This document shows positions 2,931 through 48,387 of a stretch of DNA of 64,000 nucleotides, in pieces. The stretch is from positions 124,001 to 188,000 of IMG/VR virus record IMGVR_UViG_3300017991_000002; one strand, written 5' to 3'. The stretch's first letter is position 1. Each line of letters opens with the position of its first letter. A program made the translations under genes and the position numbers. The notes under the pieces are model-generated. The model ran no database searches, was not told the origin of the DNA, and saw only the letters and a program-made list of their open reading frames with translations.

Positions 2931-3164
2931 TTAATACAGGTCTACTTCATACTCATTAAGGATGGCAATAAACCAATCCCTGATCCTTCCTACCAACTCC
3001 TCAGGGGTCAGATTTATCATATCCTTGGGTAGACCATGCTTGTCCCAAGACTTAAGCTGGGACTCTGTAGCCTGTAAAGCAGAAAGATATGTTCCAGCAT
3101 TCATGGCTATTTTAAGCTCTTCAGCCTCTTCCGGTAAGTTAAACGTCACACTCCACTCTGGCAT
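2931..3164 (-). CDS. Hypothetical protein
   Basis: 77-aa ORF with AAGGAAGGAG SD and an upstream sigma70-type promoter. Confidence 0.7.
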   Translation of the reverse strand: MPEWSVTFNLPEEAEELKIAMNAGTYLSALQATESQLKSWDKHGLPKDMINLTPEELVGRIRDWFIAILNEYEVDLY

Positions 3165-3186
3165 TGGATTCTCCTTCCTTTATAGG

Positions 3187-3215
3187 AAGATAGCATATCC
3201 GATCGAATTTGTCAA
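3187..3215 (-). promoter_or_regulatory. Sigma70-type promoter, leftward
   Basis: TTGACA (3215-3210), 17-nt spacer, TATCTT (3192-3187); the SD and ATG of 2931..3164 follow. Confidence 0.7.
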
Positions 3216-3222
3216 ATATTTG

Positions 3223-3251
3223 TTGACAAAATCATCCATTGGTTCTATATT
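3223..3251 (+). promoter_or_regulatory. Sigma70-type promoter, rightward
   Basis: TTGACA (3223-3228), 17-nt spacer, TATATT (3246-3251). Confidence 0.75.
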
Positions 3252-3428
3252 TTTAGTATGGAAGAGAGACACGAGGTTATACCGGAGGTGAAAACACCAA
3301 TAATAGAAGGCGAAATTTTGGTATGTGTCAAAAACGCAAAATAATACGAAAAAATTTTTCTTTTTTCTGTTCAGAAACGTATAAGTATAGTAGAGACCTT
3401 TAACCTCAGTCCACGAAAGGAGACATCC

Positions 3429-45646: not shown

Positions 45647-48387
45647 TTACGGTGAAGTAAACACGTTACCGCTGCAGTAGAACTTGTCCCAAACGACTTT
45701 CTTGCCGTACTGAGTCCCCAACGCTTTACGAACGACGAAATCGTCGAGGGTAATGGTCGGAGTTTCATACAGCGGGATATACGGTGCATAAATGTAACCG
45801 GTTTCCAGGAATGAAACACCCTTATACCCGACGAGGAAATCCGTCGCCGTCATATAAGGATCTTTGTAACAATCCCATTTCCCTTGAAGAGTCCCAATCT
45901 TCATGACACCCATACCGCCGGTAGCACCAGACGGAACAAAACCAGGCAGAGTTTCGATGATGTTACAAACCTCAACACCAGCGACAACCCAGTTGCCCGT
46001 TGCACGTCTGGTCTGCTGAAAGATCAGGTTAGAGGCTTCAACAAGGGTATCGAGGAATGCCTGTTTGTGCTCTGTCCAGGAAACACCCGTCGGGAGCTTC
46101 CGGTCAAAAGACACGGTACCTGCAGCAGCGATATTGGTCAAATCGCGGATTATTTCGCGGTCAATTTCAAATTTGCACTTTTGTTACTACCATCATTTGA
46201 TGGCGGGCAGGTCATCTCTGCCTGCCTCTCTACGTCACCGTAGAGGTCTGACTATATCTTCACCCACCGCTTCCTGAAGCGGGGAGGGGGCTGCCGTAGC
46301 CTCTGCAGTTTCCCACAGAGACGTAGTCGATGAACTAGAGAAAAGGAAATCTTCAGTCAAAACCAGAAAGTAAGCACTGTTTTTGGAGCACCAAGCTCGA
46401 GCGGCCTCAAACTTCTCCTCACAATAGCTCAAGAAACTTTCAGGTTTGATCTCAACCAGGAACTTTCGCCCGTCAACGAGAGTTACCAGGTAGTCCGGCA
46501 CATAGTGCTGAAACGATCCATAAGGTATTACTACCTCTTCGTACTGAATATTTGCCACGATCAGGTCGGTATCGATCAATTCCAGGAACTTCAATTCATA
46601 CGAAGACCTGTAATAAAATCTTCCCAATCTGCCGCTAAGGTAACCAGTTTTATACTGATTATTATTTCGCCTGCCCTCTGCAATCATCTTGGCCATACCC
46701 AACGAGACCTTCTTCCGATTTTCAGGATCCTTATACCTCTCCACCTGAGCCTCAGAAATCTTCTTTCTCCATTCCGGGGTTATGACCTTACCAAGAGCAC
46801 CCTGACTCATACTTTCCCTAGCCTCTTCTGAGGTATCAGTTCCAAGACGATTTCTTGTCCGTCTTGCAGCATCAGCACATTTCGGATTGTCTTTATTGGC
46901 CTTGGATATACTATCTCGATGAGACTGACTCAATTTAACTCCTTTATGAGACAGGCTCATTTGCTTTTTAGCATATCTTGAGACTATGGCATGATCTTTC
47001 TTATATACGTCAAGATCGATCTCCGGATGTGCATGCCTCAAATGACTAAGCAAATTATGAGCTTTATACTCTTTGCAGATTTGGCAAGTTATTTTTTCCA
47101 TCTTTTCTCCAGCTGCTGATTGTCTCACAGCTCGTGAGAGGTTCCAGCAATTAAGCAGCTTGTAACGCCCAGCATCTCTGCTGAGGGAGCCCAGTTTCGT
47201 TAAGCTCTTCCGCGAGGACCGCAACCAATTCTGCCTCTGCTTCAATCCCGTGAACATTCCGCAGGTTAGCAGCAGCTTCCATTGACCATCGGCTTCTCAG
47301 CTTACGGGTCCGTGCGATGACGGGCGAGCTGGTAAGCACCAAGTCAACCTCAGGCAGATTCGGGTTTCCTTCCATGTTGTAATCATACGTGGAAGTGACC
47401 AGGGTTGTATTATCAATAGTGTTACTAAAAGTCACACTGACTGAACCAGACGAGTAGTCAATGGTTCCTGTTCCATCACCGGTAAATCCCCCTGCTCCAT
47501 CATCCGTAACGGTCAGATCAGAGGCAGCGGCAGTACTGTAACCGGTGACTGTAATCGTACCAGGACGGATTGGGATAAAAGACAGAGAGCCGGTATAAGG
47601 ACCAGTAGTACCATTGGCCGTAGCAACCGTCTCAGACTCGACCTTCTCTGAGCTGTAGTAATCAGCCGCAGCAGTGTAGCCCTGAGTATCTTCAATTACC
47701 TGGCCTTTGCTGATGGCGCCTTTATTGGTACCATAAACAAACTGCAGATAGAAGACGATACTGGCAGGTCCCAGCATAGGCTGAACACTGACCAGATCAG
47801 TAGCGATCAGGTTCGGGAATATAGCTCGAATCAACGGGACTTAATTCTGCTATATTTGTTATTTACAGGGCTCTTTATCCCTGTGCTCCGATTTCTCGGA
47901 GGATCGGATCATATCATCTTCCTGGGTACTATCTTTCAGGAAGCCAGGCGCTCGTGCCTCTGTTACTGCTTTCGCTCGAGAGGTGATCTCTGAACCTTCT
48001 TCAGCCCTGGAGATATTCATCGTTACGTCTGAAGCTTGGCTGCTGATTGTCTTAGATGTAAATATGTCTGACATATGAAGATTTCCAGCAATTCACCTGG
48101 TTATTCGACAGCCATTACTGACTGAAGGCGCTCCCATTTAATCCATAAGTTTTACAGAGTGGCAACGCGAATTTTTCGAAGTTTGCTATTCCCGGAGAAG
48201 TCGTAGTCGTTGTTTCATACAGAGGATCTTTATTGGCGAAAAATCGATGCTGGCTTTCCAGCAAGAAAGCTGTCACCGTTCGCTTATAATCGTCCTCAAT
48301 AGATTCGCAAAGAGGTGACCATTTTGGGGAATTAGCAAGGCTCTCCCCTTTCTGGGTCATCTCTTCAACTAACATTTGCCGTTCCAT
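45647..48387 (-). CDS. Major capsid protein (T4 gp23-like) in three exons: complement(join(45647..46175,47203..47839,48165..48387)), 462 aa
   Basis: Splicing gives ...FEKFA/FPLIRAIFPNLIATDLVSVQPM... and ...LAEEL/KFEIDREII...; gp23 motifs TRKLRSRWSMEAA.NL and YAPYIPL. Joined length 223+637+529=1389 nt. Confidence 0.92.
46176..47202 (-). mobile_element. Group I intron (1027 nt) carrying a putative homing endonuclease
   Basis: The 5' exon ends GAGCU; the intron starts UAACGAAAC and ends G. IGS GGCUC; P AAUUGCUGGAA (47152-47142), Q AAUCAGCAG (47121-47113), R GUUCAUCGACUA (46335-46324), S AAGAUAUAGUC (46260-46250). Confidence 0.92.
46235..47101 (-). CDS. Intron-encoded endonuclease: Zn finger, NUMOD3-like repeats and TnsA-N-like PD-(D/E)XK domain (288 aa)
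   Basis: CQIC...HLRHAH; HKGVKLSQSHRDSISKA and GKVITPEWRKKISEA; YRSSYEL.F...YVPDYLV...LVEIKP. GGAG SD upstream of ATG 47101. Confidence 0.85.
   Translation of the reverse strand: MEKITCQICKEYKAHNLLSHLRHAHPEIDLDVYKKDHAIVSRYAKKQMSLSHKGVKLSQSHRDSISKANKDNPKCADAARRTRNRLGTDTSEEARESMSQGALGKVITPEWRKKISEAQVERYKDPENRKKVSLGMAKMIAEGRRNNNQYKTGYLSGRLGRFYYRSSYELKFLELIDTDLIVANIQYEEVVIPYGSFQHYVPDYLVTLVDGRKFLVEIKPESFLSYCEEKFEAARAWCSKNSAYFLVLTEDFLFSSSSTTSLWETAEATAAPSPLQEAVGEDIVRPLR
47840..48164 (-). ncRNA. Group I intron (325 nt) without an endonuclease ORF
   Basis: The 5' exon ends GCGU and the intron ends G. IGS AAUGGGA-G-CGC (48138-48128) pairs with both exons; P AAUUGCUGGAAA, Q AAUCAGCAG, R GUUCAGAGAUCA, S GAUAUGAUCC. 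Confidence 0.92.

What the first reader, a model, noticed from the sequence alone, without database searches (positions are those of the whole stretch)
46176..47202. Intron-borne TnsA-like PD-(D/E)XK nuclease whose ORF runs through the ribozyme core
Seen: the ORF begins just after Q and encodes a C2H2-type finger, NUMOD3-like repeats and RSSYE...PDYLV...VEIKP. Its last ~35 codons are read from the R, P8 and S elements, and it stops at the UGA inside the P9 tetraloop (CUCUACG-GUGA-CGUAGAG). Known: intron endonucleases are mostly LAGLIDADG, GIY-YIG or HNH; PD-(D/E)XK examples such as I-Ssp6803I are few; ORF overlap with the core has been described as core creep. Inference: a little-studied homing endonuclease type that targets intron-less capsid genes near GAGCT/CAAATTT.
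Basis: partly seen in the sequence, partly recalled or inferred. Interest (0 to 1): 0.7.

Follow-up and report, generated by a model that had tools for sequence, protein, structure and literature searches.

The report
Capsid-gene intron with gp4/TnsA-type homing nuclease

Summary
Window 46176..47202 (minus strand) is a 1027-nt group I intron between exons 2 and 3 of a gp23-type capsid gene. Intron-less relatives are colinear across the predicted junction (...AEEL|KFEIDREII). All helices P1-P9.2 are present and 40 of 71 predicted pairs show compensatory changes in six related loci.

The ORF 46235..47101 (288 aa) starts right after P6-5' (which holds its GGAG) and closes with TGA in the GUGA loop of P9. 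It has a Cys2His2-like finger, NUMOD3-like helices and a PD-(D/E)XK domain (E169, D203, E217, K219). That domain scores 41 bits against Pfam PF08722 (cut-off 26.5), its best solved fold match is TnsA, and it is 30% identical to a T4-type gp4 head-completion nuclease.

The ORF body is under purifying selection (dN/dS 0.12-0.23). The 35-residue tail is not (about 1, with low dS), so it is constrained as RNA. Relatives stop in J8/7, in P7-3', just after it, or in L9, as "core creep" predicts.

The family is large (1957 clusters) and no paper describing it as an intron endonuclease was found. Cleavage, homing and splicing remain untested.

The parts
48165..48387 (-). Exon 1 of the gp23-type major capsid gene
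   Evidence: ORF list. The junction was fixed against the intron-1-less allele L002 (...KFAF|PLIRAIF). The spliced 462-aa product is colinear with relatives.
47840..48164 (-). Intron 1: ORF-less group I intron, same IA-like type with a P7.1 hairpin
   Evidence: Rfam RF00028 scores 64.2 bits against a gathering score of 50, at 47885..48165. Ends were set by comparison with L002.
47203..47839 (-). Exon 2. Its last bases GAGCU (47203-47207) form P1 with the internal guide sequence, with a U.G pair at the splice site
   Evidence: Pfam Gp23 8.7e-28. P1 has compensatory changes in L008/L009.
46176..47202 (-). Intron 2: 1027-nt group I intron carrying the ORF in P6
   Evidence: Partial RF00028 hits of 29.6 and 24 bits on the two halves. 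The junction is proven by intron-less L012-L015. 24/41 and 16/30 pairs are compensatory.
47187..47193 (-). Internal guide sequence UGGGCUC (P1 3' strand)
47168..47186 (-). P2 hairpin
   Evidence: The sequence is entirely different in each lineage, but a hairpin is kept everywhere; its loop is a GNRA tetraloop in the five related loci and the hexaloop AGAGAU in the window itself.
47154..47159 (-). P3 5' strand GCUGCU
   Evidence: Pairs with GGCAGC at 46290-46295. Six pairs are kept in six loci through G-C to A-U and U-A to C-G changes.
47151..47153 (-). UAA in J3/4 that ends the exon-2 reading frame 17 codons into the intron
   Evidence: ORF 47151..47834.
47114..47149 (-). P4 5' strand (47144-47149, the P element), P5 hairpin (47123-47139), P4 3' strand (47114-47119, the Q element)
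   Evidence: compensatory pairs in P4 and P5.
47102..47112 (-). P6 5' strand CUGGAGAAAAG, containing the ORF's Shine-Dalgarno GGAG 5 nt before the AUG
   Evidence: An 11-bp duplex with 46335-46345 (-14.9 kcal/mol). An equivalent long-range helix of different sequence is present in L006, L008 and L009.
46235..47101 (-). Homing-endonuclease ORF, 288 aa plus TGA
   Evidence: dN/dS over the whole ORF is 0.12-0.19.
47024..47101 (-). Residues 1-26: Cys2His2-like (Ros/MucR-like spacing) zinc finger
   Evidence: C6, C9 and H25 are conserved. The model shows beta-beta-alpha with pLDDT 93-96. ROS_MUCR hits occur in 7 relatives.
46679..46978 (-). Residues 42-141: NUMOD3-like helical DNA-binding region
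   Evidence: NUMOD3 E 0.11 here, strong in 31/74 relatives. PHROG 314/655 homing endonuclease. BLASTP to NUMOD3 repeats, E 3e-5.
46343..46666 (-). Residues 146-253: PD-(D/E)XK nuclease domain of the TnsA/gp4 type. E169 = 46595-46597, D203 = 46493-46495, E217 = 46451-46453, K219 = 46445-46447
   Evidence: PF08722 41.2 bits (cut-off 26.5). PHROG 218 4.6e-18. Foldseek TnsA 1t0f/1f1z E 5e-5. gp4 of phage MIZ2 30% identity, E 6e-13.
46235..46342 (-). Residues 254-288 plus stop: peptide tail read from the ribozyme core
   Evidence: dN/dS 0.92-1.15 with dS 0.07-0.37. pLDDT falls to 50-55 at the end.
46335..46345 (-). P6 3' strand CUUUUCUCUAG (codons 253-256)
46324..46334 (-). J6/7 plus P7 5' strand, UUCAUCGACUA (the R element)
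   Evidence: P7 is kept in 6/6 loci with A-U to G-C compensation.
46301..46320 (-). P7.1 hairpin with a GAAA loop
   Evidence: 10 pairs, 5 with compensatory changes.
46290..46295 (-). P3 3' strand GGCAGC (read as the Ala-Thr-Ala-Ala stretch)
46263..46284 (-). P8 hairpin
46248..46262 (-). J8/7 plus P7 3' strand, UGAAGAUAUAGUCAG (the S element)
46228..46245 (-). P9 hairpin CUCUACG-GUGA-CGUAGAG. The ORF's TGA is 46235-46237, inside the loop
   Evidence: 7 pairs, 6 with compensatory changes.
46190..46226 (-). P9.1 (46206-46226) and P9.2 (46190-46203) hairpins
46176..46176 (-). Terminal G of the intron (omega-G)
45647..46175 (-). Exon 3 of the capsid gene (with stop)
   Evidence: Pfam Gp23 5.5e-27. 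Colinear with intron-less relatives.

Best explanation
Window 46176..47202 (minus strand) is a mobile group I intron of the IA-like type (it has P7.1, P9.1 and P9.2). It sits in phase 2 of a Leu codon inside the conserved motif E-L|K-F-E-I-D-R-E of a T4-type (gp23) major capsid gene.

Shown:
- The RNA has every element of a self-splicing group I ribozyme, and these elements are kept by compensatory changes.
- The exons join to give a capsid protein colinear with intron-less relatives.
- The loop of P6 holds a 288-codon gene under purifying selection. It has three parts: a small Cys2His2-like finger, NUMOD3-like helices, and a PD-(D/E)XK nuclease domain (E169, D203, E217-x-K219) of the TnsA/gp4 family.
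- The gene does not stop inside the P6 loop. It reads on through P6-3', P7, P7.1, P3-3', P8 and P7-3' and ends on the UGA of the GUGA tetraloop of P9.
- These 36 codons evolve as RNA, not as protein.

Inferred:
- The protein is a homing endonuclease. Its finger and NUMOD-like helices bind the uninterrupted capsid allele around GAGCT/CAAATTT, the nuclease domain cuts it with Mg2+, and recombinational repair from an intron-bearing co-infecting genome copies the intron in.
- The Shine-Dalgarno sequence lies in the 5' strand of P6, and the last 36 codons are the catalytic core. One RNA molecule therefore can be either translated through the core or folded for splicing, not both at once. This should keep endonuclease synthesis low and separate from capsid mRNA maturation, as shown experimentally for I-TevI in the T4 td intron (Gibb and Edgell 2010, cited in PMC11878797).
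For: Intron:
- Partial RF00028 hits on both halves.
- P1, P2, P4 and P5: 16/30 pairs compensatory.
- P7, P7.1, P8, P9, P9.1 and P9.2: 24/41 compensatory.
- P3 and P6 are kept in six loci with changed sequences.
- U.G at the 5' splice site and omega-G.
- Intron-less alleles L012-L015 have exon 2 and exon 3 exactly one codon apart.
- The spliced 462-aa product aligns in one piece with them.

Protein:
- PF08722 41.2 bits, above the cut-off.
- PHROG 218 (gp4 family) 4.6e-18 and PHROG 15427 endonuclease 1.5e-14.
- AF2 model pLDDT 88.6.
- Best PDB folds are TnsA 1t0f/1f1z, E 5e-5, rmsd 3.1 A.
- gp4 of phage MIZ2: 30% identity, E 6e-13.
- S166, E169, D203 and K230 are invariant, and E217 and K219 are kept in 95% or more of 74 relatives.
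- dN/dS is 0.16-0.23 in the nuclease domain and 0.12-0.19 overall.

Overlap:
- Coordinates.
- Tail dN/dS 0.92-1.15 with low dS.
- The stop falls in J8/7 (L023), in P7-3' (L006, L025), just after P7-3' (L008, L009) or in L9 (window, L002, L007).
- 29 of 159 relatives carry the same ribozyme-derived tail.

Mobility:
- The same intron and ORF occur at the same capsid site in phages whose capsid exons are only 47-70% identical.
- Relatives lack it (L012-L015).
- A related intron and ORF sit 14 codons upstream with a matching change of the guide sequence (L008, L009).
Against: - No experiment or RNA data. No RNA run holds this phage. Relatives' metatranscriptome contigs run uninterrupted over both junctions, but they could come from intron-less alleles.
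- Intron 2 does not reach the Rfam gathering score (29.6 and 24 against 50), because the model cannot span the 867-nt ORF.
- No cleavage site, and no evidence whether the enzyme nicks or cuts both strands. The dimer prediction gave no answer.
- NUMOD3 and zinc-finger Pfam models are below cut-off for this particular protein.
- A P10 pairing is weak by eye.
Confidence: 0.8

Rival explanations
1. The ORF is a decaying or catalytically dead remnant of an endonuclease, or has been turned into a splicing helper (maturase). It no longer cuts DNA.
For: Many intron endonuclease genes degenerate once an intron is fixed. No cleavage data exist. The tail evolves neutrally at the peptide level.
Against: The body of the ORF has dN/dS 0.12-0.23 while synonymous sites are near saturation. 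All four catalytic residues are intact and invariant or nearly so in 74 relatives. The ORF is full length in every lineage seen. Intron-less target alleles still circulate, so homing can still be selected.
Confidence: 0.08
2. The intron-borne nuclease also serves, or only serves, as the phage's gp4-type head-completion nuclease. That would make it a domesticated intron gene rather than a purely selfish one.
For: The nuclease domain is closest to gp4. In the complete 205-kb genome the only gp4-like sequence is this ORF, as found with phrog_218, PF08722, PF05367, PF06356 and tblastn with three stand-alone gp4-like proteins of more distant relatives that do have one. It lies in a late capsid transcript.
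Against: It carries a 145-residue sequence-reading module typical of homing endonucleases, which gp4 lacks. gp2, the usual companion of gp4, is not detectable either, so the whole module may be absent or too diverged to detect. Close relatives with uninterrupted capsid genes exist (L012-L015), though their records are fragments. Search sensitivity for a 150-aa fast-evolving protein is limited.
Confidence: 0.05
3. There is no splicing. A free-standing nuclease gene has split the capsid gene into separately made pieces (a 'fractured gene').
For: Gene callers annotate the three pieces as separate genes in all related contigs.
Against: A complete ribozyme fold with 40 compensatory pairs flanks the ORF. 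The split falls inside a codon. Exon 3 has no start codon or ribosome site at its beginning. The same gene holds a second intron that passes the Rfam gathering score.
Confidence: 0.02

Closest known systems
I-TevI / T4 td group I intron (GIY-YIG plus NUMOD homing endonuclease in the P6 loop of an IA2 intron)
   Same: A phage IA-type intron with P7.1 and the ORF looped out of P6. The protein is a modular nuclease plus a tethered DNA-binding region. The ribosome site is hidden in intron structure, and translation and splicing are in conflict (established knowledge; Gibb and Edgell 2010 as cited in PMC11878797; PMC2988022).
   Different: The catalytic domain is PD-(D/E)XK of the TnsA/gp4 type, not GIY-YIG. 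The host gene is the major capsid gene. The ORF reads through the whole 3' half of the catalytic core (36 codons). No internal late promoter was seen.
I-Ssp6803I (PD-(D/E)XK homing endonuclease, Pfam PF11645, tRNA-fMet intron of Synechocystis)
   Same: An intron-encoded endonuclease with the restriction-enzyme fold and an E/D...D...(E)xK active site.
   Different: A different family. There is no PF11645 hit at E<=1, and 2ost is not among the top 50 fold matches. I-Ssp6803I is a compact single-domain protein without NUMOD or finger modules (PMC3943268).
I-Bth0305I (EDxHD / Vsr-like homing endonuclease, recA intron of Bacillus phage 0305phi8-36)
   Same: A phage group I intron endonuclease with a restriction-fold-related nuclease joined to an extended NUMOD-type DNA-binding region. 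It was discovered from metagenomes (PMC3239194, PMC3943268).
   Different: The Vsr-type EDxHD active site is absent here. No Vsr or DUF559 Pfam hit. 3r3p is not among the fold matches. Domain order also differs: here the nuclease is C-terminal.
Phage T4 gp4 head-completion nuclease (PHROG 218)
   Same: The closest sequence relative of the catalytic domain: 30% identity over the whole gp4, sharing the YRSS(W/Y)EL...IPY...D...E(V/I)KP...K motifs. gp4 is a TnsA-like nuclease with DNase activity (PMC1189080; PMC7824862 citing Benler 2020).
   Different: gp4 is a 150-aa single-domain, non-specific, stand-alone morphogenesis protein. The window protein has an added finger plus NUMOD3-like module and sits in an intron.
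Tn7 TnsA (PDB 1f1z, 1t0f)
   Same: The best solved structural match and the name-giving member of Pfam PF08722, with the same catalytic constellation.
   Different: Only 17% identity. The TnsA C-terminal winged-helix domain is absent, and there is no transposon context.

Membership tests
Group I intron (Rfam RF00028) | Score at or above the curated gathering score (50 bits) | tested here: not met
   29.6 bits (3' half) and 24 bits (5' half). The model cannot bridge the 867-nt ORF in P6. Intron 1 of the same gene scores 64.2.
Group I intron (Rfam RF00028) | P1 with a U.G pair at the 5' splice site, terminal G, and paired elements P3-P9 including the P3/P7 pseudoknot and the conserved P/Q/R/S elements | tested here: met
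   All elements are located. 40 of 71 predicted pairs have compensatory changes. P3 and P6 are kept in six loci.
Group I intron (Rfam RF00028) | Exons join to give an uninterrupted host gene | tested here: met
   Intron-less relatives L012-L015 are colinear to the codon.
Group I intron (Rfam RF00028) | Self-splicing with guanosine | not testable with these tools
   No RNA run holds this phage.
Pfam PF08722 Tn7_TnsA-like_N (PD-(D/E)XK) | Score above the curated cut-off (26.5 bits) | tested here: met
   41.2 bits, E 2.4e-10, residues 182-250. 73 of 74 relatives also match.
Pfam PF08722 Tn7_TnsA-like_N (PD-(D/E)XK) | Catalytic E...D...(E/D)xK residues on the restriction-enzyme fold | tested here: met
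   E169 and D203 are invariant; E217 is kept in 73/74 and K219 in 70/74. Fold match to TnsA: E 5e-5, rmsd 3.1 A.
Tn7 TnsA transposase proper | C-terminal TnsA domain | tested here: not met
   The Pfam scan at E<=1 shows no TnsA C-terminal domain. The protein ends in the ribozyme-derived tail.
Tn7 TnsA transposase proper | TnsB/TnsC partners in a transposon | not tested
   TnsB and TnsC were not searched for. The ORF lies in a capsid-gene intron, which is not a transposon setting.
T4 gp4 head-completion nuclease (PHROG 218) | Profile match over the nuclease core | tested here: met
   E 4.6e-18. BLASTP to gp4 of phage MIZ2: E 6e-13, covering 3-146 of 157.
T4 gp4 head-completion nuclease (PHROG 218) | Single-domain ~150-aa protein encoded as a stand-alone morphogenesis gene | tested here: not met
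   288 aa with a 145-aa N-terminal DNA-binding module, and located inside an intron.
I-Ssp6803I family (PF11645) | Sequence or fold match to the family | tested here: not met
   Absent from the Pfam hits at E<=1 and from the top 50 PDB fold matches.
EDxHD / Vsr-like homing endonucleases (I-Bth0305I) | Vsr-type domain with the EDxHD motif | tested here: not met
   No Vsr or DUF559 hit. 3r3p is not among the fold matches.
Homing endonuclease (functional class) | Nuclease gene inside a self-splicing element, with presence/absence polymorphism at one site of a conserved host gene | tested here: met
Homing endonuclease (functional class) | Site-specific cleavage of the intron-less allele and gene conversion | not testable with these tools
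   Needs expression and a cleavage assay.

The most novel reading that the evidence does not exclude
The intron gene is not only selfish. This complete genome has no other gp4-like gene, and the intron nuclease is a gp4-type domain expressed from the late capsid transcript. It may therefore supply the head-completion nuclease activity that T4-type phages need. That would make the intron indispensable to its host, and it would point to gp4 as the source from which this endonuclease family arose.
Probability: 0.05. Interest if true: 0.85.

Novelty: new variant of a known kind. Interest (0 to 1): 0.6.

Why it matters
Reviews list six catalytic families of group I intron homing endonucleases (PMC3943268). 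The TnsA/gp4-type PD-(D/E)XK domain joined to NUMOD3-like modules is not one of them. No paper in the searchable library treats it as an intron endonuclease, yet about 2000 sequence clusters exist in metagenomes and some cultured phages.

If the enzyme cuts as predicted, three things follow:
- It adds a further, abundant lineage of site-specific nucleases.
- It links that lineage to a phage morphogenesis nuclease (gp4).
- It offers a clean natural system for studying how a protein gene and a ribozyme share the same nucleotides. Here 36 codons span nearly the whole 3' half of the catalytic core, are conserved in frame across a deep clade, and their stop codon has wandered among four positions.

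It also has a practical use. The peptide tail 'SSTT...ATAA/ATVA' in database proteins flags unannotated group I introns and split capsid genes.

Tried and rejected
- Megablast of the region against 50,697 phage records found nothing. tblastn found no full-length relative there. It gave only gp4 genes and, separately, the NUMOD repeats of neighbouring HNH endonuclease genes.
- A sequence search of PDB chains gave only chance hits.
- Rfam at gathering threshold misses intron 2. The permissive scan was needed.
- RNA evidence for splicing: no RNA run holds this phage. Four sediment metatranscriptomes laid at 80% likeness gave only short contigs of relatives. Two of these run uninterrupted across the exon 1/2 and exon 2/3 junctions. 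That agrees with the junctions but does not tell spliced RNA from intron-less DNA or RNA.
- The homodimer prediction gave no answer (score 0.00). It is not evidence either way on nicking versus double-strand cutting.
- The promoter scan found no minus-strand promoter inside the intron, so there is no evidence for separate transcription of the ORF.
- A tree of the nuclease domain (117 columns, 77 rows) is poorly resolved. Tail-bearing (intron-borne) members cluster (8 changes against 20 expected), and gp4 sequences nest among stand-alone members. No direction of descent can be claimed.
- The idea that the ORF could be made as a fusion with exon 2 was rejected. The exon frame stops at UAA 47151-47153, and the ORF is in another frame with its own GGAG.
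Full report
**What is there.** The window is bases 124,001-188,000 of a 205,367-bp virus record with direct terminal repeats, assembled from a sediment metagenome. On the minus strand between 45,647 and 48,387 lies a T4-type major capsid gene. Pfam Gp23 matches two of its pieces at 9e-28 and 6e-27. The gene is cut into three exons.

Intron 1 (47,840-48,164) has no ORF and passes the Rfam group I gathering score, 64.2 bits against 50. Its ends were fixed against a relative that lacks it.

The finding concerns intron 2. On the minus strand the sequence reads ...GAAGAGCU|UAACGAAACUGGGCUC... at 47,203|47,202 and ...AACAAAAGUG|CAAAUUUGAA... at 46,176|46,175.

**Is the junction real?** Twelve related capsid loci were fetched. 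In four of them (L012-L015) the matches to exon 2 and exon 3 lie exactly one codon apart. They read ...AEE(I/L/M)KFEIDREII..., which is what joining GAGCU to CAAAUUU predicts (CU+C = Leu). The spliced 462-aa product has no stop and aligns in a single piece with these intron-less genes across both junctions.

Metatranscriptome contigs of relatives also run uninterrupted over both junctions. They cannot be told from intron-less alleles, so I do not count them as splicing evidence.

**Is it a ribozyme?** Rfam's model cannot span the 867-nt ORF, so it gives only sub-threshold hits on the two halves, 24 and 29.6 bits. I therefore located the elements by hand and tested them on six lineages: the window, L002, L006, L007, L008 and L009. 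Their intron ORFs are 35-80% identical.

- In the 5' half, RNAalifold recovers P1 (exon GAGCUUA with guide UGGGCUC, U.G at the splice site), P2, P4 and P5. 16 of 30 pairs are kept through changes on both sides.
- In the 3' half it recovers P7, a P7.1 hairpin with a GAAA loop, P8, P9, P9.1 and P9.2. 24 of 41 pairs are compensatory.
- P3 (GCUGCU/GGCAGC) crosses P7, and P6 closes the ORF, so both were checked by duplex folding. P3 is six pairs in all six loci, with G-C to A-U and U-A to C-G exchanges.
- P6 is an 11-bp helix CUGGAGAAAAG/CUUUUCUCUAG in the window. In L006, L008 and L009 it is a helix of different sequence at the same place.

This is a complete IA-like group I intron. Self-splicing itself could not be tested.

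**The ORF.** It runs 47,101-46,235, 288 codons plus TGA. Its AUG comes 5 nt after a GGAG that lies in the 5' strand of P6. The exon-2 frame ends at a UAA in J3/4 (47,151-47,153) and the ORF is in another frame, so it is not made as a fusion.

Sequence and fold evidence:
- Pfam gives Tn7_TnsA-like_N at 41.2 bits, cut-off 26.5, for residues 182-250.
- PHROGs gives family 218, the gp4 'head closure' family, at 4.6e-18, and an 'endonuclease' family at 1.5e-14.
- An exhaustive profile search finds 1957 representative clusters at E<=0.001 and 286 at E<=1e-10.
- In a 74-sequence alignment S166, E169, D203 and K230 are invariant, and E217, K219 and P220 are kept in 90-99% of sequences.
- The AlphaFold model built on that alignment has mean pLDDT 88.6.
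- Its best solved matches are the two TnsA structures: E 5e-5, probability 1.0, rmsd 3.1 A over 130 columns. Other PD-(D/E)XK nucleases follow.

**A refinement: gp4-like rather than TnsA-like.** Identity to TnsA is 17%. Residues 146-253 align with the whole head-completion nuclease gp4 of a T4-type coliphage at 30% identity, E 6e-13, sharing YRSS(W/Y)EL, IPY, D, E(V/I)KP and K. They align with stand-alone gp4-like genes of distant relatives at 34-35%.

gp4 was predicted to be a TnsA/T7 endonuclease I-like nuclease in 2005 (PMC1189080). It was later reported to have DNase activity needed for morphogenesis (PMC7824862 citing Benler 2020). The TnsA C-terminal domain is absent.

**The N-terminal 145 residues.** C6-x2-C9-x10-H20-x4-H25 folds as a small beta-beta-alpha unit with pLDDT above 90. 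C6, C9 and H25 are conserved wherever aligned. The spacing resembles the prokaryotic Ros/MucR finger, which seven relatives match.

Residues 42-141 form helical hairpins. NUMOD3 is sub-threshold here (E 0.11) but strong in 31 of 74 relatives. The region aligns with NUMOD3 repeats of an HNH homing endonuclease at E 3e-5. So 'C2H2-type finger' and 'NUMOD3-like repeats' are reasonable descriptions, but not Pfam-grade calls for this protein.

**The overlap with the ribozyme.** Codon 253 (CUU) begins the 3' strand of P6. From there the ORF reads J6/7 and P7-5' (the residues Ser-Ser-Thr-Thr), P7.1, P3-3' (Ala-Thr-Ala-Ala), P8, J8/7 and P7-3', then the 5' strand of P9. It stops on the UGA of the GUGA tetraloop.

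Three results show that this stretch is RNA first and peptide by accident:
- It is the part of the intron with the compensatory changes.
- Between the window, L007 and L002, dN/dS is 0.16-0.23 in the nuclease domain and 0.12-0.19 overall. In residues 254-288 it is 0.92-1.15 with much lower dS (0.07-0.37), so synonymous and non-synonymous sites are held equally.
- The stop codon wanders among relatives. It is UGA at the start of J8/7 in L023, the UAG of AUAGUC in P7-3' in L006 and L025, UGA just after P7-3' in L008 and L009, and the L9 loop in the window, L002 and L007.

That is what Edgell, Chalamcharla and Belfort predicted when they coined 'core creep' (PMC3073962).

The depth of the overlap goes beyond a textbook case. 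The intron context was confirmed in L008, L009, L023 and L025. Other family members have short tails. The two examined sit between ordinary genes with no group I signal, one of them carrying HTH domains instead of the finger. These look like free-standing relatives.

**How it most likely works.** Shown: the ribozyme architecture, the intact and selected nuclease gene, the overlap, and presence/absence of the intron at one site.

Inferred: during late transcription the capsid pre-mRNA either folds and splices, or a ribosome loads on the GGAG before P6 can form and translates the ORF. That ribosome must then melt P6, P7, P3 and P8, so the same molecule cannot splice meanwhile. This is the conflict shown experimentally for I-TevI and the td intron.

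The protein would then bind an uninterrupted capsid allele through the finger and NUMOD-like helices, cut near the insertion site, and be copied in by repair in a mixed infection. Support for mobility comes from the same intron and ORF at the same codon in phages whose capsid exons are only 47-70% identical, and from relatives that lack it. In L008 and L009 a related intron and ORF lie 14 codons upstream (after AHGI), with the guide sequence changed to match the new exon (GGGAU/GGUCCC, GGGGU/GGCCCC). In L008 the first intron carries a paralogous nuclease of the same family.

Not resolved: whether the enzyme nicks or makes a double-strand break, and where. The dimer prediction gave no answer.

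**Comparison with what is known.** The architecture works like phage intron endonucleases such as I-TevI, I-HmuI or I-Bth0305I: a catalytic domain tethered to NUMOD-type DNA readers. The catalytic domain belongs to none of the six families listed in the 2014 review. It is not the I-Ssp6803I family and not the Vsr-like EDxHD family.

The 2012 census of PD-(D/E)XK proteins lists PF08722 only as a transposase. Searches for TnsA or PF08722 together with homing or intron-encoded endonucleases found nothing relevant. The library holds only open-access papers, so this is absence of evidence.

Predicted structures of cultured-phage proteins do resemble the whole protein. Examples are Bacillus phage Moonbeam 'Endonuclease', Campylobacter phage CP20 'TnsA endonuclease N-terminal domain-containing protein', and several 'NUMOD3' proteins. 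A 2025 survey of Bastillevirinae introns lists intron ORFs with 'no conserved domain detected'. So members have been seen but not recognised or characterised.

**An unexplained point.** The complete genome has no other gp4-like sequence by four profile families and three tblastn queries, while more distant relatives have a stand-alone gp4. gp2 is not detectable either. The simplest reading is that this lineage lacks the gp2/gp4 module or has diverged beyond detection. A dual role of the intron nuclease is not excluded, and I give it about 5%.

**Verdict.** It is a new variant of a known kind: a mobile group I intron whose endonuclease uses a gp4/TnsA-type PD-(D/E)XK domain, with an unusually long, ancient and demonstrably RNA-constrained overlap between the ORF and the catalytic core. 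Cleavage, homing and splicing await experiment.

Noticed in passing
window 47840..48164 (-): A second, ORF-less group I intron in the same capsid gene (Rfam 64.2 bits), between ...KFAF and PLIRAIF. It is present in L006 and absent in L002-L005 and L011. It contains a 71-aa ORF (47859..48074) that I did not examine and take to be spurious.
   Followed up: partly
L008:2324-3184 (+): In a distant relative the first capsid intron carries its own 286-aa nuclease of the same TnsA/gp4-like family (PF08722 9e-5, Phage_endo_I 2e-5) with a Ros/MucR-type finger. Its 3' end also overlaps the Rfam hit of that intron (2992-3269). That capsid gene therefore holds two paralogous intron endonucleases.
   Followed up: partly
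L008:3893-5016 and L009:648-1809: A related intron and ORF are inserted 14 codons upstream of the window's site (after ...MMKAHGI), with the internal guide sequence changed to pair with the new exon. This is evidence of retargeting within the family.
   Followed up: partly
G000 whole genome (window 46343..46666 is the only hit): The complete 205-kb genome has no separate gp4-like head-completion nuclease and no detectable gp2 DNA-end protector. More distant relatives (G003-G005) have a stand-alone gp4-like gene.
   Followed up: partly
The motif can serve to flag unannotated introns and split genes in metagenome protein sets.
   Followed up: partly
L025:515-2256 and L023:110-1452: In two further relatives an ORF-less group I intron (59-63 bits) lies only 100-200 nt upstream of the ORF-bearing intron. 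These capsid genes appear to hold closely spaced introns separated by a very short exon.
   Followed up: no
L038:3001-3879: A family member with HTH domains instead of the zinc finger sits between ordinary genes, overlapping the next ORF by 4 nt, with no group I signal. It is probably a free-standing homing endonuclease of the same nuclease family.
   Followed up: partly
window 45997..46174 and 48164..48270 (runs X6, X5): Sediment metatranscriptome contigs of ~83%-similar relatives continue from exon 3 straight into exon-2 sequence, and from exon 1 into exon 2. They are either spliced mRNA or intron-less alleles.
   Followed up: no
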